Virus record (IMG/VR): IMGVR_UViG_3300049215_000771
Span: 434,001 to 498,000 of that record
Length of the DNA stretch: 64,000 bases
Direction: 5' to 3' (one strand)
The translations under genes and the position numbers were made by a program. Under the pieces are notes generated by a model. The model did no database searches, had not been told where the DNA came from, and saw only the letters and a program-made list of their open reading frames with translations. Below, piece after piece: positions 16,169-60,717 of the stretch (position 1 is its first letter; each line of letters starts with the position of its first letter).

Positions 16169-17644
16169 TCACGGTAGGCCCAATTCCTTGCGGGCAACTT
16201 TGTCAATCGGCAAAGGAGCGCCCATCACAGCCGTTCGTCCGCTCGTCGTCGTGGGGAAGGCGATAACTTCCTTCATCGAGTCCTCCTTGCACGCCAACAT
16301 CACCAGTCGGTCAATACCGAGAGCAATCCCTGCGTGTGGTGGAGTGCCGTAGTCGAAGGCTTCCAGCATATGCCCCACGCTGCGTTCGATCTCCGGTTGA
16401 GAATATCCCATTACCTTGTACGTTGCTTCCAGCATCGCCCTGGTATGTGCCCGAACGCTACCTGACCCGATCTCCATGCCGTTGCACACCAGGTCGTACT
16501 GATGAGCAACGATGTCACCCACGTTCTGACCCTGGAGTAGCCAATCACTGTGTTCTTCCAGCGGGGCCGAAAACGGGTTGTGCATGAAGGTCCACGAGGA
16601 CTTGCTGTCCAGCTTATCAACATCTTCCTTCGCCGGCTTGAACATTGGGAAGCGGACGATCCAGCAAAACATCAATGCGCCGGCGTCCTTCTGTGCCTGC
16701 GTCCTGATGTCGGGCTTGTCCGTGCCCCACCGATTCATCGCTTCTTCGTAGGTGAAGATCGGGAAGCTGTTGCCGATGCCGCCGAGATAGGGATAGCGTT
16801 TTAACTGCCCGCCTTCATAGGTCCACGGCTCGTAGAGTTCTTTTTCTTTCTCGTAGTCCCAAATCTTCAGCTTGTAGAAAATAGAACGAACAACTTCCGT
16901 AGCTGTGTGCAACACGCTACTTTCGGTGCCGAAAGCCATTTCCAGGTCAACCTGGGTAAACTCGAAGCCCCGGTCGGAACGAGGAGTCTCGTCCCTGAAG
17001 CACCGAGCAATCTGGTAGTAGGCCGGCACGCCACCCGTCATCAACAATTGCTTGTACTGCTGCGGGCTTTGTGGCAGGGCATAGAACTCGTTGTGGTAGA
17101 GCCGAGAAGGAACAACGAAGTCCCGTGCCCCTTCCTTTGTGGGAGCCGCCAAGATTGGCGTCTCGATCTCCAGAAAACCTCGCCCGTCCAGACACTCACG
17201 GATCGCCTGAAGGGTCTTGGCACGAACCCGAAGGTTGCGTGCCATACGCTTGCGGCGAAGGTCGATGTATCTGTAGCGAAGGCGCTTGTCGATGTCGGTT
17301 TCGTATCCGTCCGACTGAACTGTGATCGGCAGCGGCTTCGTGGCGTTGAGAACTTCGACGTTCCCGACCACGAACTCCACCTTGCCCGTGTACATATCGG
17401 GATTTTCCATGTGTTCAGGGCGGGCTTTCACCTGGCCATGAAACCTCACAACATCTTCGAGATTCAACCCGGCAAGGGTTTTGTTGCGACCGACACACTG
17501 CACGATGTAACCTTCACCATCCCGAAGGTCAATGAAGGTCATTTTGCCGTGGTCACGCTTGGCGTCCACCCACCCCTGGATGGAAAAAAGAGTCGAAGAC
17601 CCCGCCAAACGGACTGTGGACTCAATGCTTGTGTGTTGAGACAT
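16169..17644 (-). CDS. aspS: Aspartyl-tRNA synthetase, compact (GAD domain absent), non-discriminating signature
   Basis: OB fold GWV..KRDHG..FIDLRD; motif 2 QIARCFRDE; GTDKPDIR joined directly to FCWIVRFPMF; motif 3 GIDRL. Start MSQH at 17644. Confidence 0.93.
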   Translation of the reverse strand: MSQHTSIESTVRLAGSSTLFSIQGWVDAKRDHGKMTFIDLRDGEGYIVQCVGRNKTLAGLNLEDVVRFHGQVKARPEHMENPDMYTGKVEFVVGNVEVLNATKPLPITVQSDGYETDIDKRLRYRYIDLRRKRMARNLRVRAKTLQAIRECLDGRGFLEIETPILAAPTKEGARDFVVPSRLYHNEFYALPQSPQQYKQLLMTGGVPAYYQIARCFRDETPRSDRGFEFTQVDLEMAFGTESSVLHTATEVVRSIFYKLKIWDYEKEKELYEPWTYEGGQLKRYPYLGGIGNSFPIFTYEEAMNRWGTDKPDIRTQAQKDAGALMFCWIVRFPMFKPAKEDVDKLDSKSSWTFMHNPFSAPLEEHSDWLLQGQNVGDIVAHQYDLVCNGMEIGSGSVRAHTRAMLEATYKVMGYSQPEIERSVGHMLEAFDYGTPPHAGIALGIDRLVMLACKEDSMKEVIAFPTTTSGRTAVMGAPLPIDKVARKELGLP

Positions 17645-19497: not shown

Positions 19498-19812
19498 ATG
19501 ATCCAGCCGATTCTCGAACTTGATCCTTTGGTGGTGTGCAACCAGAACCGGAAGTTGAAAGCTGTCTGGTCGATGGAAGCACAGCAAGATGTTCGTGCCA
19601 TGCACAACATCCCGGCAGCCAGTGCGCTCGCTGCGCAGATAGCGGCAGAAATCAACGCCGAGATCGACCAGGAAATACTCAACGACTTGAGGAATGCTAT
19701 AAATCCATTCCCACAGTACATCCCACCACCCGCCCCGAAACCTGAAGTGTGGGGCGTCAAGAAGAAAGCCCGCAAGCAGTACCGTTCGATTGATGATCCG
19801 TGGGAGAAGTGA
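19498..19812 (+). CDS. Small protein containing an internal segment of a T4 gp23-like major capsid protein
   Basis: RKLKAVWSMEAQQDVRAMHNI...AEINAEIDQEILNDL matches the recalled gp23 segment R.LKA.(Y/W)S.E.AQDLRA.HG......EI..EI.REI; ends with the RSIDD motif. Confidence 0.65.
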   Translation: MIQPILELDPLVVCNQNRKLKAVWSMEAQQDVRAMHNIPAASALAAQIAAEINAEIDQEILNDLRNAINPFPQYIPPPAPKPEVWGVKKKARKQYRSIDDPWEK

Positions 19813-21504: not shown

Positions 21505-21656
21505 GATGTCCTCCAGAACATTATAGGGCAGCCACAATAAGTTTCAATATCAATAGATGAAACCAATATCAATGGATACATACTTCATTGAAGTTACTCC
21601 TGTGTATAGGCGACCTCGCTATGTTATATTTTCCTCACAACGAAGGGAATACCAAA

Positions 21657-22463
21657 ATGAAGAAGAAGTTGGGTGGGTCGGTATTCATCCATAACGGTAT
21701 CGAATTCGACTACTGCCTCGAAGCATCTGTATCCAGTCTGGCGGCGCTGTGCGATGAAGTAGTCCTACTTGATGCTTCTAGCACCGATGGGACAACTGAC
21801 TTATGCCTTCAGTTGGCGCAACGCCTTCCCATCAAAGTAATTACGGGCGTGCCGTGGGAACAAGCCCCGAACCATGTACGACTCCCAATCCTTGCCAATA
21901 TCGCAAAATCCCATCTCAATACCGAGTGGCATTTCATGCTCCAGGCCGACGAAGTTATCCACGAAGATAGTTTCGATACAATCCGCCGTGTTATTCATGA
22001 CCCCACCAAGAAGTCTTACTTCAATCGTCGCCTGAACTTCTTTGGCGATTTTAACCACTACATCAAACTTAACCAGGATGGTGCCAACAAGCCTTGTAGC
22101 GACGTGATTATTCGACTGGCGACCATTGAGAACCCGGCTGTTGGTGATGCGGAGTCCCTGGGTGTGGACCCGGCCTTCTGCTCCGAGAGGTACATTGACG
22201 ACATCGTGATCTTCCACTACGGCATGGTGCGACAGGACGAGAAACACATCCAGAAGATTTTGTCAATGCAAAGTTGGTTTTGGGGACCGGGCAGTAACCC
22301 GGACCACAGGGTTCAGGAAATGCACAAGAAAGGCGACGGAATCTTCGATTGGCGCACGATGAAAACCCTGGAGATGTTGGAACCACTCACCAGAAGTCAT
22401 CCGAAGTTTGCTAAGGAATATGTCGAGTCAAGGCAGGCGTTGAAGAAAATCCCGGTGAATTAA
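21657..22463 (+). CDS. Glycosyltransferase family 2-like protein
   Basis: CDEVVLLDASSTDGT and WHFMLQADE (xDE) motifs; HYG. Confidence 0.8.
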   Translation: MKKKLGGSVFIHNGIEFDYCLEASVSSLAALCDEVVLLDASSTDGTTDLCLQLAQRLPIKVITGVPWEQAPNHVRLPILANIAKSHLNTEWHFMLQADEVIHEDSFDTIRRVIHDPTKKSYFNRRLNFFGDFNHYIKLNQDGANKPCSDVIIRLATIENPAVGDAESLGVDPAFCSERYIDDIVIFHYGMVRQDEKHIQKILSMQSWFWGPGSNPDHRVQEMHKKGDGIFDWRTMKTLEMLEPLTRSHPKFAKEYVESRQALKKIPVN

Positions 22464-23003
22464 ATGCTTGACGAATGGTTCAAATGCGCAGTGTGCGGAT
22501 CGAAAGAAGCACCCATCATGAGCATGGGGTACATTTCCCAATGCTATTGTCGAGATTGCGCCGACAACAAAAAAGAAGATTGCAACGCAGCCTTCAAGAA
22601 GGTCCACGACGAAGCTGTGCTTGAAGAAGCCTTTCGCCCCAAAATCAAACACGATGAAATTGACGTGAGAGATGATTACTTTCAGTACATCGTACAAAAC
22701 AAACAAGAACCAGAACTGGAGATGTGCTTCAGGAGAATTGCCGAGCAGGTGTACCTTCTAAAAACTACCACCAAGAAAGATTGGCATAACAACTGGCGCT
22801 GGATTCCTTTCATCGAAAACGTCGATAAAGGGACGTGGCAAGAAGTCCCCAAAGATTTTGTGGAGGCGGCGATCCCGTATTGTTACGACAGGTTGAAAAC
22901 ATACGATGCAGGCAGGGCCACAGCGAAAGATTACTTCACTGCGGCCTGCTGCGGTTTGTATGAGTATGCAAAACTGCACAACTGGCGAGATTGGGCGTAC
23001 TAA
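22464..23003 (+). CDS. Hypothetical protein with an N-terminal CxxC...CxxC
   Basis: CAVC...CRDC zinc-finger-like pattern. Confidence 0.5.
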   Translation: MLDEWFKCAVCGSKEAPIMSMGYISQCYCRDCADNKKEDCNAAFKKVHDEAVLEEAFRPKIKHDEIDVRDDYFQYIVQNKQEPELEMCFRRIAEQVYLLKTTTKKDWHNNWRWIPFIENVDKGTWQEVPKDFVEAAIPYCYDRLKTYDAGRATAKDYFTAACCGLYEYAKLHNWRDWAY

Positions 23004-24421
23004 TACAACTTCCGGTCTTCCGCCTCAAGAATCTTGCCCAAGTTGGGAAAGAAAATTTCCCACCACTCCGTCATCTCGTGCATGATGTCCTGGAGAGTGT
23101 CATAGATTGGGGTTTTCTTGCACTCCTCAATCCACTTGTCACAGTAGGTGTGCCAGAAGAAGTCCGTGAGGGTCTTCAAACCCAGCGGCCAGTTCAGGTC
23201 GTGTTCGATGTAGGTTTGTAATCTCCCAGCGGTCTTGATCCACTCCAGGTAGTATTCCTGGTTCTCTCCCCCAGGACAACCTGGCTCCCAATCCTCCAGC
23301 CCCCACTTCCCATTGCCGTGGATGAACCTGTAGGCATTGACCAGCTTGTTGAGCAGGGCTTTGCCTTTCTTCATGACGGCTTCATCACAGCGGGTGTCCG
23401 TGCCGACCTGGTTGCACGCCGCCCAATAACGAACACCCTCCATGCCGTACTTCTCAACGTAGACGTGCGGCTCGACGAAGTTGCCCGCCGTTTTGCTGAT
23501 CTTGTGGCCGTGCTTGTCCAGGGCGTGGCCGCTGATAATGATTTTCTTCCACGGAACCTGATCGCTGTGATAGAGACTTTTGACGATGGTGAAGAATGCC
23601 CACGTCCTGATGATGTCGTGCGCCTGGAACCTGGCGTCGAAGATCGGGGGATGAAGGGTAGGAATCTTCGTGTGTGCCGCCCACGTCATCTGCGGCGACA
23701 AGCTGGAAGTAAACCAGGTGTCAAAAACGATGTTGTCGGGTTCCCCCGGAATGTGGATGCCGTAGTTACGCTCACGGGAAATAGACCAATCCATCGTGAG
23801 GCCATCCAGCCAGCGATGCAGCCGCTCCTGAAAGACCTTGGGATGCCACTGGATCAGGTCGATAGCCTGCCTGAGACGGTCCAGGTGGTCACGGATGTTG
23901 ATGAACCAGCCCTCGCCTGTCCGTAGCTCGACTTTCTCACCAGAACGCTCGTAGCGGCCTTCCTCGTCGATCTCGGCCTGAGAAACGGAGACACGGGTTT
24001 TGGGGCACCAGAAATAGTCCCTGACGGCTTTGTAGGCGTAGCCCTTCTTGACCAGATCGTGGAACGACATCTCGGCCAAGGCGATGGCGTGGCGGTCATA
24101 GGTGTGGTAGTGATGCTTGCTCCAGCCCATGCCGATTTGTTGGAACAAGTCGGAGTACATCTTCGACGTATTCTCGGCAAACCTGACGATACCGGGCGTA
24201 TCGAAGATTTTGTCCTTCTGTGCCAACTTCTCGGTCGGCAGGCCGTTGCAATCAAAACAGAAAGGGTACAGAAGGGGGTCTTCCTTCTGGCCATCTTCGG
24301 TGAGATGGAAACGCTTGGCCCTGGCAACAAAGTCCATGTGGCAGTACGAGAAAACATGGCCCATATGCAACAGGCCAGAGATCGTCGGCGGCGGAACGTC
24401 GATAAGGTATTTTGGGTCCAT
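23000..24421 (-). CDS. valS: Valyl-tRNA synthetase-like, minimal (CP1 editing domain and C-terminal coiled coil absent)
   Basis: PPPTISGLLHMGH (HIGH), DCNGLPTE, DWSISR, QAHDIIRTW and KISKTAGN (KMSKS). Start MDPK at 24421. Confidence 0.85.
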   Translation of the reverse strand: MDPKYLIDVPPPTISGLLHMGHVFSYCHMDFVARAKRFHLTEDGQKEDPLLYPFCFDCNGLPTEKLAQKDKIFDTPGIVRFAENTSKMYSDLFQQIGMGWSKHHYHTYDRHAIALAEMSFHDLVKKGYAYKAVRDYFWCPKTRVSVSQAEIDEEGRYERSGEKVELRTGEGWFINIRDHLDRLRQAIDLIQWHPKVFQERLHRWLDGLTMDWSISRERNYGIHIPGEPDNIVFDTWFTSSLSPQMTWAAHTKIPTLHPPIFDARFQAHDIIRTWAFFTIVKSLYHSDQVPWKKIIISGHALDKHGHKISKTAGNFVEPHVYVEKYGMEGVRYWAACNQVGTDTRCDEAVMKKGKALLNKLVNAYRFIHGNGKWGLEDWEPGCPGGENQEYYLEWIKTAGRLQTYIEHDLNWPLGLKTLTDFFWHTYCDKWIEECKKTPIYDTLQDIMHEMTEWWEIFFPNLGKILEAEDRKLY

Positions 24422-24604
24422 GCCAGATGATACTACGATTTTGTGAGTTTGTAAGGTCGCAATTGTTTTTCGGTGAGCGGTATCCACGGCAAATCGGGAC
24501 GATTTTCCATGCACCCGCCACAAGGACGAGAAACGTCCTTGTGGCAGGGATGGACTCTATCTTCCGGGAGGAAACCCACGTCCTTGGCGTATCTCCAAGG
24601 ACAT

Positions 24605-25000
24605 TTACTGCATTGGCTCATTTTTCCCTCCCGTTTGATAGTGATGCCGATGTCCGTTTTTGCATCGGATGGAGGAAGTAATCGGCTTGTTGTAGACACG
24701 AAGTTCAATCTGTTGGTCGCAGCCTTCTTCCTTGCAAGGTACGGCGATCTTCTGTTGAACTACCAGGTCTTTGCCCAGGGCTTCACTGGACCAGTCGAGG
24801 CGATTCTTCTCTCCATCTTCAGATTCGTAAAGGGCCAGACCCCCTGCATGAATCGTTACTTCGATGTCTTCGGCACACACCTTGTAGTCCGTGAACTTGC
24901 TACGGTCCTTCTCGTCATAGACACGGAAGAAGTGTCGCTTCGTGAAAGGGTTGTAGAGAAAGAAACCACGGACACCTGTTGCGGACTTCTCATTCATCAT
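24605..25000 (-). CDS. Hypothetical protein
   Basis: ORF overlaps its neighbours in operon fashion. Confidence 0.5.
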   Translation of the reverse strand: MMNEKSATGVRGFFLYNPFTKRHFFRVYDEKDRSKFTDYKVCAEDIEVTIHAGGLALYESEDGEKNRLDWSSEALGKDLVVQQKIAVPCKEEGCDQQIELRVYNKPITSSIRCKNGHRHHYQTGGKNEPMQ

Positions 25001-25394
25001 TCACCCGCCTTTTATGAAGGCGTTCGATAAGGATGGGGTACTTGTCGGAAATGATGTCGAAAGCCAGAATGTAGTAGTACCCAGGTTTCAGGTTTCCAGC
25101 TTCTCGACGTTGCTCGAACACCTTGACGGAGCAGTAGTCCCGGCTCCTGTACTCGACGTAGTAGGCTTCCGGGTGTTTGCGCCGCCAAAGCATGGGTTGT
25201 GGGACACAGATATTGGCGAGATTCAGGTGTTTCTCCAGAAACTCCACCATCGGGCCTTTTTCGGTCATCACAACTCCGTTATAGCCATCAGCCAAAGGCA
25301 GGCCATTGGGAGTCATGAAGCGGACATTTTCTTCGGTCGGGTAGAGCGGCAGATGAAGTCGCTCCATATATCGAGTAGGCATTGTTGACTCCAA
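24990..25394 (-). CDS. Hypothetical protein
   Basis: ORF in the co-oriented run. Confidence 0.5.
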   Translation of the reverse strand: MESTMPTRYMERLHLPLYPTEENVRFMTPNGLPLADGYNGVVMTEKGPMVEFLEKHLNLANICVPQPMLWRRKHPEAYYVEYRSRDYCSVKVFEQRREAGNLKPGYYYILAFDIISDKYPILIERLHKRRVNDE

Positions 25395-25468
25395 CAGTTA
25401 CGTCTTGGGGGCTTGTTCAGTTTAGCATATCCGATGAGGATGTCCATATCAACAGGGTATATATTGGC

Positions 25469-25861
25469 ATGAATTTCCGTCAATTCCTTGAACATGAATT
25501 CCGCTTCCAGGGAGAAACTGTTGGTATCATTACGGCATATAACCCCAATGGTGAAACAATATCCTCCCGTGAGAACCGTAAACTGAATAAACGGCTCTGG
25601 AACGATCTGCGGGCCACTGGATATGACCCGTGGGCGATCAAAGGCAACTACAAAGGAGCCGCAGAACAGTCGTTCTTGGTTTCTGATATTTCTCGTGCGG
25701 ATTTGATCCGCCTGGCTAAGAAATACGACCAGGAGGCCGTCGTGTGGGGCAGGAAAACAGACAATGGCTATGACGTTGAATGGATTGAAGGCGAAGAAAC
25801 AACAAAACGTGACAAGGTGTCCAACATCAGGTCGTTAATTTCGCAGTCAACGAAATTCTGA
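25469..25861 (+). CDS. DUF3293-like protein with a capsid-targeting-like N-terminus
   Basis: IITAYNP..E...N...N..L pattern; starts MNFRQFLE. Confidence 0.6.
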   Translation: MNFRQFLEHEFRFQGETVGIITAYNPNGETISSRENRKLNKRLWNDLRATGYDPWAIKGNYKGAAEQSFLVSDISRADLIRLAKKYDQEAVVWGRKTDNGYDVEWIEGEETTKRDKVSNIRSLISQSTKF

Positions 25862-26435
25862 CCTCGTTGGCATCTGCCTTGCCCTTCAGTTCCTTCATCA
25901 CCTGGCCGACCAAGGAGTTGAGCGCCGCCTGTTTGCCCTTCTTGAAGTCGGCTACCGCTTTGGCGTTTCCTGCAATCACCTTGTCAACGGCATCGGCCAG
26001 TGCGTCCCCGCCCTCGCCAAAAAATCCGTCTCGGCAAATTACATCGAAAGCCGCCACGCCTTCCCAGCATTCCTCGAAAACATCTCGCACTTGCTTCGCA
26101 GAAAGTACGCCGTGGTGACGCAGAAACAACAGATATGCGATGTCTTCTTGGAGCCAGGGGCGATATTCTTTCACTTCTGCAATGGACTCGCCCGCTTCAT
26201 CCATCTTGACCTTGAACTCGTTCGTGAGAAACTTGGCGATAGAAACAGCAAACTGCGCTCGCTCCAGCTTCTCACGCACTGTGTCTATTATACCCAAATT
26301 GGTCAGTCCCCAAGGCCAGCAGGACATGAATTCACATAAAAAAGCAGCGGCATTCAGCCTTCCCTGGGGAGTCTTCAGGTCTTTCTGAAACTCGAACCAG
26401 TAGTGCCGAACGACGGCCAGTTCTTCGTTTGTCAT
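25827..26435 (-). CDS. GatB/YqeY C-terminal (tRNA-binding) domain protein
   Basis: VIAGNAKAVADFKKGKQAALNSLVGQVMKELKGKADAN matches the GatB C-terminus; the catalytic GatB N-terminal domain is absent. Confidence 0.85.
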   Translation of the reverse strand: MTNEELAVVRHYWFEFQKDLKTPQGRLNAAAFLCEFMSCWPWGLTNLGIIDTVREKLERAQFAVSIAKFLTNEFKVKMDEAGESIAEVKEYRPWLQEDIAYLLFLRHHGVLSAKQVRDVFEECWEGVAAFDVICRDGFFGEGGDALADAVDKVIAGNAKAVADFKKGKQAALNSLVGQVMKELKGKADANEVRISLTAKLTT

Positions 26436-27031
26436 TCTTGATCGAGGCGGTACACGATGTCTGATCGCAGGACGGTTTTGACGCCCTTTGTGACCATCAT
26501 ACCTTCGTGACGTAATTCGTGCGGGAAGATCAACGCCGTTCCCAGCTTCGGCTTTACGATACCCAGCCCCTCAAAACGTGTCTCGCCACCCTCGAAGTCA
26601 TCATTGAGATAGACGATGAACGTCAAGAACGTCCTAGTAATGTCGTCGATCCTGAACATGATGTCGAAGTGCGTGGCGAACCGATGCCCAGGCTCATATT
26701 TGTAATATCGCAACCGCTCATTGAGGCCAATAGGGTTGTGGAACTCGTGTTTCTCTTCCCACAACTTATCGAAGTCCACGAAGGGGTCCGGGCGCAAGTC
26801 TTTATAGAACTGCTCAAGGGATGGGAAGAAGCGAACCCGGTCCCATATCTGCGCAGCCCGTATTGGGTCATCTTTCACAGCCCTGTATCGGGCTTCGGGT
26901 TGACCTTGGCTTGTGTATCGTTGTTCTTGCCAGCCGGCAGCGTCGGCGTATTCCAACTCAGCCTGGCATTCTTCAGGTGTGTAGAAACCGTGGAGCAGAA
27001 GGACATTGGGGAAAACATCTTCGTAGATCAT
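26432..27031 (-). CDS. 2OG-Fe(II) oxygenase, prolyl-4-hydroxylase-like
   Basis: H-x-D (HFD), TFIVYLNDDFEGGET, distal H (HEG) and a K..LRSD strand. Confidence 0.85.
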   Translation of the reverse strand: MIYEDVFPNVLLLHGFYTPEECQAELEYADAAGWQEQRYTSQGQPEARYRAVKDDPIRAAQIWDRVRFFPSLEQFYKDLRPDPFVDFDKLWEEKHEFHNPIGLNERLRYYKYEPGHRFATHFDIMFRIDDITRTFLTFIVYLNDDFEGGETRFEGLGIVKPKLGTALIFPHELRHEGMMVTKGVKTVLRSDIVYRLDQE

Positions 27032-28072: not shown

Positions 28073-28558
28073 CTACGTCCCCTCAATCTCCCGAATGTAG
28101 TGGCGAGCCATTTCAATGCCGCTGGGGTTGGGAATCATTGCCGCCTTCTGTCCCAGGAGGCAGGCGGCGATGAGGGCCGCATCCAAAGGCGGAACCGCCG
28201 CAAAGGTCGGCCCAGGCCCGGTGATCCTCACCATGCTGATATGATACCGATGAGGCGTGCAGTAGGTATCTTTCGACATCTCCACCGAGATGATGCAGTG
28301 GTCATCACGGCGACGGTCGATCACCCGGCACAAACCAACCTCAACCTGCCACATGCCGTTTCGAGGGCATTTGTCGGGATTCTCCACCTGCCATCGACTG
28401 CGCTCCACTGCTTCGCATTCGGTGTTGGAGTACACCGGGCTTTCTTCAGCCGGGTACTTGTCCGCAGCTTCCCTCATCTCGACGCCCATCTGAATCATGG
28501 CGGCGATGGTGTAGGGAACGAAATCATCAGGACTTCGCTTCTTCGTTTCCATAGTCAT
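28073..28558 (-). CDS. Hypothetical protein
   Basis: Start trimmed to MTMETKK to limit overlap with thrS. Confidence 0.5.
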   Translation of the reverse strand: MTMETKKRSPDDFVPYTIAAMIQMGVEMREAADKYPAEESPVYSNTECEAVERSRWQVENPDKCPRNGMWQVEVGLCRVIDRRRDDHCIISVEMSKDTYCTPHRYHISMVRITGPGPTFAAVPPLDAALIAACLLGQKAAMIPNPSGIEMARHYIREIEGT

Positions 28559-29753
28559 ACCCGAAATCGAACTCGTTGAGGTAAGCTGCCTCGGCGAAGA
28601 AATCTCGCTTCGGCAAGGTCTTGTTAGTTCCGTCCCGCTCTCGAACAGTGACGGTTTCGGCTTCCACTTCCCGGTCCCCGATGATGAGCATTCGGGGGAT
28701 GTATTTCTCCTGAGCGATGGCAACCATCTGCGCCACCCGTTTGCCGGAAAGATCAACCATCGGACGAAGTTTCCAGTTCTCCAGCTTCACCTTCAGATCG
28801 AAACAGTAGCCCCTGGCCTTGTCAGTAACAGGCAGGATGGCGTACTGAATGGGGGCGAGCCACACAGGAAGGTGCCCCTGGTAGTGTTCGAGCAGGATGC
28901 CGATGAACCGCTCGAAGCTGCCATAAATGGCACGGTGTACAACCACAGGGGTTTTGCGGGCGTTGTCATGGTCAGTGTACTCCAAACCGAACCGAATGGG
29001 AAGCTGGAAATCCAACTGAATCGTTGCGGTCTGCCATTCCCGGCCTTGGCTGTCTTTCACGAAGAAGTCGATCTTGGGGCCGTAGAATGCCCCTCCACGG
29101 GGGTCTTCGGTGTAATTGGCGTAAGAACCCTGGAGCGAGGCCCGAAGATCGTCTTCAGCCTTGTCCCAGGTCGCCACTTCGCCCATGAAGTTCACCGGCC
29201 TGGTGGACAGCACGGCCCGGAGTTCCATGCCCAGCTTCCAATAGACACGCTGGACCATGACACAAAGCATGGTGATTTCTTTGTCGATTTGATCGGGAGC
29301 GAGGAAGATGTGAGCGTCGTCCTGGCAGAAGGAGCGACAGCGAGTGAGGCCGCTGAGAGCGCCGGAAACCTCGTCACGATGCAGAACACCTTGGTCGGCG
29401 ATGCGGAGGGGAAGTTCTTCGATGGAGCGAGCGCCTTTGGCCTTGTAGATTTCCATGTGGCCGGGGCAGTTCATTGGTTTCGGGATCAACAGGACATCTT
29501 CATCTTTGCCGTGGACCCCGAACATATTCTCTTTGTAGTGTTCCCAATGCCCGGAGATTTCGTACAACTCACGCTTCCACAGGATCGGAGTGCGTACTTC
29601 CTGGTAGTTCCATTGCTTCTGGATGGCCCGAATCTTGTCCTGGAGGATGGTGTAAACGATGTTGCCGTTGGGAAGCCAGATGGGGCAGCCGGGGGCCAGG
29701 TCGGAGAACATGAACAGGTCCATCTCACGACCGATTTCACGATGATCTTTCAT
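28527..29753 (-). CDS. thrS: Threonyl-tRNA synthetase lacking N1/N2 (editing) domains
   Basis: Begins at DHREIG; KPMNCPGH, HRDE.SGAL.GLTR.R.F.QDDAHIF, GGAFYGPKID, IHRA-type VVHRAIYGSFERF and an anticodon-binding domain. Confidence 0.95.
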   Translation of the reverse strand: MKDHREIGREMDLFMFSDLAPGCPIWLPNGNIVYTILQDKIRAIQKQWNYQEVRTPILWKRELYEISGHWEHYKENMFGVHGKDEDVLLIPKPMNCPGHMEIYKAKGARSIEELPLRIADQGVLHRDEVSGALSGLTRCRSFCQDDAHIFLAPDQIDKEITMLCVMVQRVYWKLGMELRAVLSTRPVNFMGEVATWDKAEDDLRASLQGSYANYTEDPRGGAFYGPKIDFFVKDSQGREWQTATIQLDFQLPIRFGLEYTDHDNARKTPVVVHRAIYGSFERFIGILLEHYQGHLPVWLAPIQYAILPVTDKARGYCFDLKVKLENWKLRPMVDLSGKRVAQMVAIAQEKYIPRMLIIGDREVEAETVTVRERDGTNKTLPKRDFFAEAAYLNEFDFGYDYGNEEAKS

Positions 29754-57735: not shown

Positions 57736-57826
57736 TTGGCAAGGTGGGATTCGATACCCACACGGTAGATTCGTCAACCTACCAACCCCCTCTAGCGGGG
57801 GCTGCGTCTTCTTCCGCCACTTGCCA
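57736..57826 (-). tRNA. tRNA-like RNA with an aberrant anticodon loop (GCTAGA) and 8-nt T loop
   Basis: TGGCAAG/CTTGCCA, A73; CCCCC-GCTAGA-GGGGG; 8-bp V arm; GTGGG-TATCGAAT-CCCAC. Confidence 0.6.
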
Positions 57827-59540: not shown

Positions 59541-60717
59541 TCGTCTGTTTCTTCCTTTCAAGAACTTCTTCAAAGTGAGCGATGACCTTGGCTCCACGCA
59601 CCGGGCAGAAGCGGCCCTCGTTCACTTCTCTACGGTAGTAAGCGATCCAACCTTCCAGTTCTTTGACACTCCCCTGCTTCCGCAGGTTCATGTGCCCGCC
59701 GTAGATTCCCCGTCGCTGGGCGAGTTGTTGTCCCGCCCGATGTCGGGACTGCATTTCCCCTCGGATGATTCCGATTCTTGTTGATTCTGACATCGGTACT
59801 TTCCTGGTAATGGCCCTATCCAACCCTTTGGCAAACCATCGCCAACCGGAATATACCATCCGGTCGCCGTTTCGGGATGCCCTGTCTGTTGAAGAATCCC
59901 GATCAGTTCGCCGTTGAACTCACAGCCTTCGGGATAATCATCCGTACTGTATTTCGCCAGTACACCCTGAATGGCCTCGTTCAGTTCCTTCTTGATTTTC
60001 TCGATCACACTCATTTCTGCGCCCCACGCCTTATGCCCGCCAACTTCTTGCAAGATCGGCTCGTAGTATTTCCAGGCCGTAGCGTAAGGAATGTTGGTGT
60101 CACACCCTTCACAATCTTCTTCCAGCAAATGATGCCCAACACCTTCTTCAGCACAAGCCGGGTCCGGGCAATGCCTCATTGGAGCATGACAGTTCGGACA
60201 AACGTAGTAAAACTTCCTGCCACTGGCGTCGGTACTCCATTCAATCGACCGGGCCTGAAACTCCCTCCAAGTGATCGCCCCATCTTCGTACAACTTGCGA
60301 AGTCGGCGGGGGTCCATCTTCTTGTATGGTCCAGCCGGGCCGTTGATGGTTATGAGCCGTCTCAGGTATCTTTGAGCGCCTTCATCACGGCGTTGAACGC
60401 TGCTGTCGCCCGTTCCTTGTCCCCGATCTTGTTGACCGCCCATAACATCAACCTCAAGTCGTTCGCTTGAGCCTCCAGCGCCGTTTGCGGGATTGGGAAA
60501 GCATCTCCATTGCGGTCATGCTTGCCGTACCTGTCGATTTTTCGAGCCTCGGCGATGGCTTCTTCGTCGCCTTCGAGGATGCGTTGCACCAGACCACGTT
60601 CGTTGAGAGCCGCCAGGAAATTGAAAACTTCACCTTTGCTGATGGTCAACTTCTCGGCCAGCATTTCACACAGCTTCCAGCGATCCTTCATCGACATCGC
60701 CATAACTGTTCTCCAAG

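What the first reader, a model, noticed from the sequence alone, without database searches (positions are those of the whole stretch)
23000..24421. ValRS with a clean deletion of the CP1 editing domain
WCPKTRVSVSQAEID runs within a few residues into YERSGEKVELRTGEGWF. In normal ValRS these two segments flank the ~200-aa CP1 domain that hydrolyses Thr-tRNA-Val (established). The C-terminal coiled coil is also missing, leaving 473 aa versus the usual ~900.
Basis: partly seen in the sequence, partly recalled or inferred. Interest (0 to 1): 0.7.

Follow-up and report, generated by a model that had tools for sequence, protein, structure and literature searches.

The report
Huge-phage valyl-tRNA synthetase without proofreading domain
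A 533-kb bacteriophage from a moss metagenome encodes a half-size valyl-tRNA synthetase that keeps the catalytic core and anticodon-binding bundle but has no proofreading (CP1) domain, and this trimmed form is a conserved family in huge phages rather than a broken gene.

Summary
Window 23000-24421 (- strand) is an intact 473-aa ORF. It aligns with ValRS on both sides of the CP1 editing domain, and 6 residues (DEEGRY) replace the 145-194 residues that the nearest cellular ValRSs carry there. Also missing are the N-terminal ~30-45 aa, a 35-46-aa insert after residue 226, and the last 90-129 aa. The HIGH (HMGH) and KMSKS (KISKT) motifs, the ValRS-type amino-acid pocket and the helical anticodon-binding domain are kept.

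It is not a one-off deletion. More than 120 sequence clusters (43-80% identity, 423-492 aa) share the junction, many on 0.5-0.67 Mb phage contigs. None turned up in a pattern scan of one genome per 185,579 prokaryote species (best 80 of 583 relatives examined). Stenotrophomonas jumbo phage RAS14 lost CP1 independently from a bacterial-type ValRS.

The same phage encodes four tRNA-Val genes, a ThrRS without its editing domain, and an IleRS with CP1 intact. It has no YbaK/ProX-type or AlaX-type trans-editing domain.

Most likely this is an active, proofreading-free ValRS that belongs to a phage translation module. I found no earlier description in the literature I could search. Activity and error rate are untested.

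The parts
23000..24421 (-). Gene for the 473-aa CP1-less valyl-tRNA synthetase (stop codon TAG included)
   Evidence: ORF list; Pfam tRNA-synt_1 151 bits; NCBIfam PRK13208 ValRS 353 bits; AF2 model pLDDT 92; best structural match 1GAX at Z 34.1
24374..24394 (-). PPPTISG, residues 10-16: ValRS-type start of the amino-acid pocket, leading into HIGH
   Evidence: Aligns to Tth ValRS P41-P42-P43-N44. P10, P11, T13, I14, S15 and G16 are invariant in 34 family members. The same motif occurs in the nearest cellular ValRSs
24356..24367 (-). HIGH motif (HMGH, residues 19-22)
   Evidence: H19, G21 and H22 are invariant in the family alignment; positions
23951..23968 (-). Six-residue linker DEEGRY (residues 152-157) that takes the place of the CP1 editing domain
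   Evidence: 145-194 residues of the nearest cellular ValRSs fall in this gap. Tth ValRS 194-345 is unmatched. The junction motif is conserved across the family
23714..23761 (-). Second junction (GIHIPG / EPDNIVFDTW, residues 221-236), where a 35-46-aa insert of cellular ValRS is absent
   Evidence: Tth ValRS 415-448 is unmatched
23600..23623 (-). AHDIIRTW (residues 267-274), pocket segment equivalent to Tth ValRS D490-I491...W495
   Evidence: alignment; H268, D269, I270 and W274 are invariant
23489..23503 (-). KMSKS motif (KISKT, residues 307-311)
   Evidence: K310 invariant; K307 and S309 nearly invariant
23003..23383 (-). Helical anticodon-binding domain (residues ~347-473), ending without the C-terminal tRNA-binding domain
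   Evidence: Helices 347-472 in the model. Aligns to 1GAX up to residue 696. F422, W423, C427, I431, E432 and K435 are invariant. Pfam Anticodon_1 is recorded for many family members
28527..29753 (-). Companion gene: 408-aa threonyl-tRNA synthetase made of the catalytic and anticodon-binding domains only (no N-terminal editing domain)
   Evidence: TIGR00418 452.7 bits, above its cut-off, matching profile positions 171-549 of 565. No tRNA_SAD domain anywhere in the genome. More than 50 clusters of 385-413-aa relatives, while cellular homologues of 580-650 aa carry PF07973

Best explanation
The gene belongs to a 532,729-bp tailed phage that has a T4-type major capsid protein and a large terminase, recovered from a moss metagenome. 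It encodes a streamlined valyl-tRNA synthetase derived from an archaeal-type (PRK13208-like) ValRS.

Shown:
- The Rossmann core with HIGH and KMSKS is intact.
- The amino-acid pocket matches that of cellular ValRS.
- The helical anticodon-binding bundle is intact and under purifying selection across a large phage family.
- CP1, a second small insert, the N-terminal extension and the C-terminal tRNA-binding domain are gone.

Inferred:
- The enzyme activates valine with ATP.
- It recognises the NAC anticodon of tRNA-Val through the retained bundle. The phage encodes four tRNA-Val genes, all with A73, covering the anticodons GAC, CAC and UAC.
- It transfers valine to the tRNA 3' end.
- It cannot carry out CP1-dependent hydrolysis of Thr-tRNA-Val.

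Accuracy would then rest on three things: discrimination in the synthetic site, possible re-sampling of mischarged tRNA by the host's full-length ValRS, and the phage's tolerance of some Thr-for-Val substitution during a short infection.

The gene lies in a translation island with tRNA genes and other trimmed synthetases, including a ThrRS without its editing domain and an AspRS. The likely benefit is that phage tRNAs stay charged independently of the host, with compact and possibly faster enzymes.
For: ValRS identity:
- NCBIfam PRK13208 scores 353 bits, well above ileS, leuS and metG.
- VIA-align gives 1GAX ValRS as the best match: Z 34.1, rmsd 2.5 A, 454 of 473 residues.
- A close Atlas relative of the same family superposes on full-length ValRS models at TM 0.92-0.95.

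Catalytic competence:
- HMGH and KISKT are present and conserved. P10, P11, T13, D57, N59, W236, D269, I270 and W274 are invariant in 34 sequences of 43-80% identity.
- The same motifs occur in the nearest cellular ValRSs and in 1GAX.

tRNA-dependent function:
- The anticodon-binding bundle is retained with invariant residues.
- The phage has four tRNA-Val genes with A73 and NAC anticodons.

Not a broken gene:
- More than 120 clusters of 423-492 aa share the architecture, many on contigs of 0.5-0.67 Mb.
- The Atlas clusters are 95-97% viral.
- No further ValRS piece or free CP1 exists in the genome.
- Only 22 codons follow the TAG stop before the next stop.

No phage-encoded editing: PF04073 and PF07973 are absent from the genome.

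Precedent:
- Mycoplasma mobile LeuRS lacks CP1, which is replaced by a nonapeptide. It aminoacylates and mischarges Ile (PMC3643597). Its structure matches the model at Z 31.9.
- Loss of the C-terminal D-loop contacts in prokaryotic IleRS is non-essential and can raise turnover (PMC13752280).
- Huge phages are known to carry tRNA synthetases, proposed to charge phage tRNAs (PMC7162821).

Recurrence: cultured jumbo phage RAS14 has a 449-aa CP1-less ValRS that groups with bacterial-type ValRS.

Possible expression: contigs 100% identical to the gene and its 5' flank occur in a moss metatranscriptome.
Against: - No biochemical data exist for any member.
- The score is below the curated ValRS cut-off (353 against 738 bits).
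- The C-terminal tRNA-binding domain, which supports aminoacylation in canonical ValRS (from memory of the T. thermophilus work, not checked here), is missing, so activity could be weak or need a partner.
- The metatranscriptome signal is sparse and DNA carry-over is not excluded.
- The protein-tRNA complex could not be modelled.
- The phage keeps an IleRS with CP1 motifs intact, so it has not discarded proofreading in general.
Confidence: 0.65

Rival explanations
1. The enzyme charges tRNA-Val, but proofreading is supplied in trans. The supplier would be the host's full-length ValRS re-sampling released Thr-tRNA-Val, or an unrecognised phage factor such as the small conserved neighbour ORF at 24605-25000. 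In that case fidelity is not really relaxed.
For: The host ValRS is presumably present in the infected cell (inference). A 131-aa ORF with an ~85-aa conserved core and no known family lies next to the mini-ValRS in the window and in relatives L092-L096 and L103, sometimes upstream and sometimes downstream.
Against: No YbaK/ProX or AlaX-type domain is present in the genome. The small ORF lies next to MetRS, not ValRS, in other phages, and next to no synthetase in one contig. It has no detectable similarity to any editing domain. The complex prediction was not folded.
Confidence: 0.2
2. It is a synthetase-like paralogue whose product serves something other than ribosomal translation. Examples would be supplying Val-tRNA or Val-AMP to a tRNA-dependent transferase or a modification pathway, or binding tRNA-Val as a regulator.
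For: Truncated synthetase paralogues with non-translational roles exist (reviewed in PMC9437257). Phage enzymes can use aminoacyl-tRNA for DNA modification (Mom, PMC13219725). The score is below the ValRS equivalog cut-off.
Against: The gene lies among tRNA genes and other synthetases. It keeps the anticodon-binding domain and all catalytic motifs. No partner transferase is conserved next to it.
Confidence: 0.12
3. Substrate specificity has shifted. The enzyme would charge only phage tRNA-Val variants (an orthogonal pair), or prefer another small amino acid such as Thr or alpha-aminobutyrate.
For: The domains that contact the tRNA elbow and acceptor arm are lost, so recognition must differ from canonical ValRS. 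The phage carries its own complete set of tRNA-Val isoacceptors.
Against: The pocket residues cannot be told apart from those of cellular archaeal-type ValRS. The phage tRNA-Val genes carry the usual A35, C36 and A73, which to my knowledge are the main E. coli identity elements.
Confidence: 0.1
4. It is a decaying remnant of a captured host valS with no function.
For: About half of the ancestral protein is missing.
Against: The frame is intact. More than 120 clusters down to 43% identity keep the same boundaries and invariant catalytic residues. The fold prediction is confident. The same architecture arose independently in RAS14.
Confidence: 0.03

Closest known systems
Archaeal-type valyl-tRNA synthetase (NCBIfam PRK13208; e.g. 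those of DPANN archaea, Alphaproteobacteria and Chloroflexota found)
   Same: Best HMM match. 32-37% identity over the shared core. Same PPPT(V/I)SG, D.NGLPT, DTW.TSS and QAH(D/E)IIRTWA motifs and the same FFW..CD..IE..K motif in the anticodon-binding bundle. In the tree the phage clade groups with them (98).
   Different: The cellular enzymes have 776-923 aa. They carry the N-terminal extension, CP1 (145-194 aa), a 35-46-aa insert and a C-terminal domain of 90-129 aa, all absent here.
Thermus thermophilus ValRS in complex with tRNA-Val (PDB 1GAX)
   Same: Top structural match: Z 34.1, rmsd 2.5 A, 454 aligned residues. HIGH, KMSKS and the P41, P42, W456, I491 and W495 equivalents are conserved.
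   Different: About 215 residues within 1GAX 28-696 have no counterpart, most of them CP1. Residues 697-862 are absent.
Mycoplasma mobile LeuRS (PDB 3ZIU), a natural class Ia synthetase without CP1
   Same: CP1 is replaced by a short peptide (9 residues there, 6 here). Minimal architecture; the structure matches at Z 31.9. That enzyme aminoacylates and mischarges (PMC3643597).
   Different: It is a LeuRS of a reduced bacterial genome and the cell's only LeuRS. The protein here is a ValRS, phage-encoded, acts beside a host enzyme, and also lacks the C-terminal domain.
Methionyl-tRNA synthetase core (e.g. PDB 2D54, 5XET)
   Same: Same overall domain plan and size: Rossmann fold with a small connective stub plus a helical bundle. 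Foldseek TM 0.79/0.75; Z 30-33.
   Different: Sequence and pocket are ValRS-type. metG scores only 73 bits against a cut-off of 336. The phage has a separate true MetRS.
Stenotrophomonas jumbo phages RAS14 / CM1 'valyl-tRNA synthetase' (WAX21612.1, 449 aa)
   Same: Phage-encoded, CP1-less, C-terminally short ValRS of similar size.
   Different: Only 25% identical. The best model is bacterial-type PRK05729 (314 against 173 bits), and it groups with bacterial ValRS (99). This is an independent loss. It also lacks the small hairpin stub that the window protein keeps.
Yeast mitochondrial minimalist ThrRS (PMC4267643), for the neighbouring phage ThrRS
   Same: Catalytic core plus anticodon-binding domain, with no editing domain.
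   Different: Organellar, not viral. This concerns the companion gene, not the ValRS.

Membership tests
Valyl-tRNA synthetase (class Ia) | Rossmann-fold catalytic domain with HIGH and KMSKS signature motifs | tested here: met
   HMGH at residues 19-22 and KISKT at 307-311, conserved in the family; Pfam tRNA-synt_1 151 bits
Valyl-tRNA synthetase (class Ia) | ValRS models score better than IleRS, LeuRS and MetRS models | tested here: met
   PRK13208 353 bits and TIGR00422 229 bits, against ileS 159, leuS 88 and metG 73
Valyl-tRNA synthetase (class Ia) | Score above the curated equivalog cut-off (full-length architecture) | tested here: not met
   353 against 738 bits for PRK13208, and 229 against 612 for TIGR00422. 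Profile positions 191-343, 415-446 and 663-863 are unmatched
Valyl-tRNA synthetase (class Ia) | ValRS-type amino-acid pocket (PPP motif, Asp, Trp, Ile and Trp equivalents of Tth P41/P42/D81/W456/I491/W495; residue list recalled from the 1GAX literature) | tested here: met
   P10, P11, W236, I270 and W274 align to the Tth residues. D57 lies in the conserved D.NGLPT motif shared with the nearest ValRSs. All are invariant
Valyl-tRNA synthetase (class Ia) | CP1 post-transfer editing domain inserted in the Rossmann fold | tested here: not met
   Six residues stand in place of 145-194. No CP1 piece is encoded elsewhere in the genome apart from the IleRS's own
Valyl-tRNA synthetase (class Ia) | Helical anticodon-binding domain | tested here: met
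   Helices 347-472 align to 1GAX up to residue 696. Anticodon_1 is recorded in many members
Valyl-tRNA synthetase (class Ia) | C-terminal tRNA-binding domain (junction domain or coiled coil) | tested here: not met
   90-129 residues of the nearest ValRSs, and 1GAX 697-862, have no counterpart. Read-through of the stop adds only 22 codons
Valyl-tRNA synthetase (class Ia) | Valine-dependent aminoacylation of tRNA-Val | not testable with these tools
   Needs enzyme assays. The complex prediction with tRNA was not folded
Naturally CP1-less class Ia synthetases (type: Mycoplasma mobile LeuRS) | CP1 replaced by a short linker while the catalytic core and anticodon-binding domain remain | tested here: met
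   description of MmLeuRS in PMC3643597
Naturally CP1-less class Ia synthetases (type: Mycoplasma mobile LeuRS) | Retains aminoacylation and mischarges near-cognate amino acids | not testable with these tools
Methionyl-tRNA synthetase | Score above the metG cut-off; MetRS-type pocket | tested here: not met
   metG 73 bits against 336. A true MetRS is encoded elsewhere in the genome (477 bits)
Synthetase-like paralogues without a tRNA anticodon domain (type: GluQRS/YadB) | Loss of the anticodon-binding domain | tested here: not met
   The anticodon-binding bundle is retained and conserved

The most novel reading that the evidence does not exclude
Huge phages of this lineage run a self-contained, proofreading-free charging module for the easily confused Val/Thr/Ser group. 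It consists of a ValRS without CP1, a ThrRS without its editing domain, and the phage's own tRNAs. The module would be selected for speed, compactness or independence from host control. Phage proteins would then be made with measurably raised Thr-for-Val and Ser-for-Thr substitution. The trimmed enzymes might also form natural orthogonal pairs with phage tRNAs.
Probability: 0.25. Interest if true: 0.8.

Novelty: new variant of a known kind. Interest (0 to 1): 0.62.

Why it matters
ValRS is a textbook case of obligatory proofreading, because threonine is isosteric with valine. As far as I know, and as far as eight full-text searches show, no natural ValRS without CP1 has been described.

Here it is a large, conserved viral family, and it evolved at least twice. 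One occurrence is in a cultured jumbo phage, which makes it directly testable.

It bears on three questions:
- Why do huge phages carry synthetases at all?
- How much translational accuracy does a virus need?
- How small can a working class Ia synthetase be? That last point is useful for minimal or orthogonal translation systems.

Tried and rejected
1. Split gene or hidden domains. A six-frame search of the whole phage genome with the protein and with TIGR00422 found no extra ValRS piece. Only 22 codons follow the TAG stop. Rejected.

2. Cellular origin of the short form. A single-protein scan of 185,579 species genomes found nothing. The profile scan reported 583 relatives and kept the best 80. 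Nearly all span 1.8-2.1 kb for the same residues, so they keep CP1, and the open frames I checked were 776-994 aa. The short matches were partial alignments, or genes cut by a contig end, such as L012.

3. The GatB/YqeY-domain neighbour as a trans tRNA-binding helper. It is not found within 6 kb of the gene in 12 related loci. Left as a mere note.

4. The small neighbour ORF (24605-25000) as a partner. Adjacency is conserved in some relatives, but the ORF lies beside MetRS or no synthetase in others, and it has no family. Unresolved.

5. Complex prediction with ValRS, tRNA-Val and the small ORF was not folded because of the RNA chain. This is no evidence either way, and the single job is spent.

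6. Trans-editing domains (PF04073, PF07973) are absent from the genome.

7. PHROGs has only a full-length (903-position) family of unknown function that matches in three pieces.

8. Literature. Eight full-text searches found no description of a CP1-less ValRS or of editing-less phage synthetases. Subscription journals are not covered.

9. The trees are quick searches with SH-aLRT support only and contain long branches. I did not run the AU test.
Full report
**What is there.**
Window 23000-24421 on the - strand is an intact ORF of 473 codons, with ATG at 24421 and TAG at 23002-23000. A longer TTG-initiated frame exists, but homologues start at the same MxP.YLID N-terminus.

Pfam finds the class I synthetase core (tRNA-synt_1, 151 bits). 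The best NCBIfam model is the archaeal-type ValRS PRK13208 at 353 bits. That is well above ileS (159), leuS (88) and metG (73), but below the curated cut-off of 738.

**What is missing.**
- HMMER against T. thermophilus ValRS (1GAX) aligns residues 3-156 to 34-193, 159-226 to 346-414 and 229-435 to 449-654.
- The TIGR00422 profile is covered at 31-190, 344-414 and 447-662 of 863.
- I aligned the protein with eight of its nearest cellular relatives, taken from a scan of one genome per 185,579 prokaryote species. Five segments are absent:
  - 29-46 residues at the N-terminus.
  - 145-194 residues between residues 151 and 158. This is CP1, replaced by DEEGRY.
  - 35-46 residues after residue 226.
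  - 10-13 residues after residue 436.
  - 90-129 residues after the C-terminus.
- An AlphaFold2 model built on 34 family members is confident (pLDDT 92, pTM 0.90).
- Foldseek ranks MetRS structures first, because they have the same compact plan (TM 0.79/0.75). 1GAX gives the highest query-normalised TM, 0.83.
- VIA-align puts 1GAX first: Z 34.1, rmsd 2.5 A, 454 of 473 residues aligned, spanning chain residues 28-696 of 862. The naturally CP1-less Mycoplasma mobile LeuRS follows at Z 31.9.

**What is kept.**
- HMGH (19-22) and KISKT (307-311) are conserved.
- The ValRS-type pocket elements are invariant in 34 sequences of 43-80% identity. They are PPPT (10-13), D57/N59 in the D.NGLPT motif, W236 in DTWF, and D269-I270...W274.
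- These elements align to P41, P42, W456, I491 and W495 of 1GAX and to the same motifs of the nearest cellular ValRSs.
- The helical anticodon-binding bundle (about residues 347-473) is retained, with invariant F422, W423, C427, I431, E432 and K435.

These facts argue for a tRNA-dependent, valine-specific enzyme. They argue against a pseudogene or an adenylating paralogue.

**Where it lives.**
- The window is part of a 532,729-bp virus record.
- The record encodes a T4-type major capsid protein (289 bits) and a large terminase.
- The DNA comes from moss metagenomes.
- The genome has 56 tRNA genes. Four are tRNA-Val (GAC twice, CAC, UAC), all with A73.
- It also encodes a set of synthetases:
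  - IleRS, 922 aa, full length, with the CP1 motifs WTTTPW and GTGCVH intact.
  - MetRS, 585 aa.
  - TyrRS, 390 aa.
  - LysRS, 517 aa.
  - AspRS, 491 aa.
  - A ThrRS of 408 aa that starts at the catalytic domain and lacks the editing domain.
  - A SerRS of 334 aa that lacks the N-terminal arm.
  - Two class II fragments.
- There is no second ValRS and no free CP1.
- There is no YbaK/ProX or AlaX-type editing domain.
- Reading past the TAG stop gives only 22 codons.

**It is a family.**
- The 5.8-billion-protein search returned more than 120 clusters of 423-492 aa at 43-80% identity. Many are on contigs of 0.5-0.67 Mb, among them the 634,780-bp uncultured phage LR745206.1.
- The junction motif SQ(A/S)E(I/L)D..G.(Y/I)ER(S/T)G...E.R.GEGWFI is conserved.
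- The ESM Atlas clusters of this form are 95-97% viral.
- Twelve IMG/VR contigs carry it.
- No short form was found in cellular genomes.
- A 645-aa phage relative (P0216) lacks CP1 but keeps the complete C-terminal part, so the two losses are separable.
- In trees rooted with the phage IleRS, the 23 huge-phage sequences form one clade (98) that groups with archaeal-type ValRS (98).
- The 449-aa ValRS of the cultured Stenotrophomonas jumbo phage RAS14 groups with bacterial-type ValRS (99). Its best model is PRK05729 (314 against 173 bits).
- CP1 was therefore lost at least twice in phage ValRS lineages. The trees are quick searches with long branches, so the exact sister group is uncertain. A cellular 861-aa ValRS is the nearest at support 83.

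**How it most likely works.**
The shown and inferred steps are listed under Best explanation. In short, the intact synthetic site should make Val-AMP. It should also make Thr-AMP at the low frequency intrinsic to ValRS; that is established knowledge, not measured here. The amino acid would then be transferred to tRNA-Val, which is bound mainly through the anticodon bundle. Without CP1, the enzyme itself cannot clear Thr-tRNA-Val after transfer.

Two precedents make activity plausible. M. mobile LeuRS without CP1 charges tRNA and mischarges Ile (PMC3643597). Removing the C-terminal D-loop contacts of a prokaryotic IleRS is tolerated and can speed turnover (PMC13752280).

Huge-phage synthetases have been proposed to charge phage tRNA variants (PMC7162821). 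The parallel loss of the ThrRS editing domain suggests a lineage-wide relaxation of proofreading for this amino-acid group. That loss is itself a family of more than 50 clusters on huge contigs. The intact IleRS CP1 shows the relaxation is selective.

Short contigs 100% identical to the gene and its 5' flank occur in a moss metatranscriptome. This fits expression but does not prove it.

**Rivals.**
- Editing in trans, by the host ValRS or an unknown phage factor. This is possible. A conserved 131-aa neighbour is a weak candidate.
- A non-translational role. The genomic context and the retained anticodon domain argue against it.
- A shift in specificity. The pocket is unchanged, which argues against it.
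- A decaying remnant. Family-wide conservation argues against it.

**Novelty.**
Synthetases in huge phages are known (PMC7162821), and a CP1-less LeuRS is known (PMC3643597). Eight full-text searches found no description of a natural ValRS without CP1 or of editing-less phage synthetases. Public annotations simply call these proteins valyl-tRNA synthetase. I rate it a new variant of a known kind, of solid interest to synthetase and phage biologists, and directly testable in RAS14.

Noticed in passing
window 28527-29753 (-): The 408-aa ThrRS consists only of the catalytic and HGTP anticodon domains; the N-terminal editing and TGS domains are absent. More than 50 similar clusters of 385-413 aa lie on contigs up to 670 kb, whereas cellular homologues of 580-650 aa keep tRNA_SAD. 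Three related phage loci have it within about 5 kb of the mini-ValRS.
   Followed up: partly
window 16169-17644 (-): The 491-aa AspRS passes the bacterial aspS cut-off but matches in two stretches. This suggests the bacterial insertion (GAD) domain is missing.
   Followed up: no
G000:C1:46690-47694, 60043-60660, 499480-500247 (outside the window): The 334-aa SerRS lacks the N-terminal coiled-coil arm (serS profile 151-397 of 418). A 205-aa HisRS-like and a 255-aa GlyRS-like ORF look like fragments.
   Followed up: no
G000:C1:37029-39797 (outside the window): The 922-aa IleRS is full length and keeps CP1 with the WTTTPW and GTGCVH motifs. The phage therefore retains proofreading for Ile/Val while dropping it for Val/Thr and Thr/Ser.
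   Followed up: partly
window 38882-63080 (-): Fourteen tRNA genes are spaced 0-4 kb apart. Nearly all are long-variable-arm types (Ser x4, Leu x7, Tyr), plus Phe and a CUA-anticodon tRNA that abuts tRNA-Leu(GAG) at 57826/57827. The other 42 tRNAs of the genome, mostly short-arm types, lie on the + strand at 0-121 kb.
   Followed up: no
whole genome; window 57736-57826: The genome has three tRNAs with a CUA anticodon and one with UCA. TAG still ends many long ORFs, including the ValRS gene, though it is the rarest stop among ORFs over 500 aa (4 of 59). Stop-codon reassignment was not examined further.
   Followed up: partly
window 24605-25000 (-): This 131-aa ORF has an ~85-aa conserved core and a Cys/His-rich tail and matches no Pfam or PHROG family. 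It has 21 homologues, some on huge contigs. It lies beside the mini-ValRS in several phages and beside MetRS in others.
   Followed up: partly
window 25827-26435 (-): A stand-alone 202-aa protein carries a GatB/YqeY domain (82 bits). To my knowledge this domain helps tRNA binding in some synthetases. It is not a conserved neighbour of the mini-ValRS.
   Followed up: partly
window 19543-19695 (+) and G000:C1:58177, 351378, 517826: Four short ORFs each match a different piece of the T4 Gp23 major capsid family. They are additional to the full capsid gene at C1:339008-340213. Similar small Gp23-like ORFs lie near synthetase genes in related phages.
   Followed up: no
window 25382-25861 (+), 26432-27031 (-), 21588-22463 (+): The neighbours include a DUF3293 / SAM-lyase-like protein, a 2OG-Fe(II) oxygenase and a family-2 glycosyltransferase.
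   Followed up: no
window 21716-24781: Contigs of 151-194 nt, 100% identical to the window, occur in a moss metatranscriptome that appears to be filed twice. They cover part of the ValRS gene, its 5' flank, the small neighbour ORF and the glycosyltransferase gene.
   Followed up: partly
L118 8001-9938 (protein P0216): A 645-aa phage ValRS relative lacks CP1 but keeps the N-terminal extension and the complete C-terminal part (PRK13208 profile matched to position 788 of 801). It looks like an intermediate architecture.
   Followed up: partly
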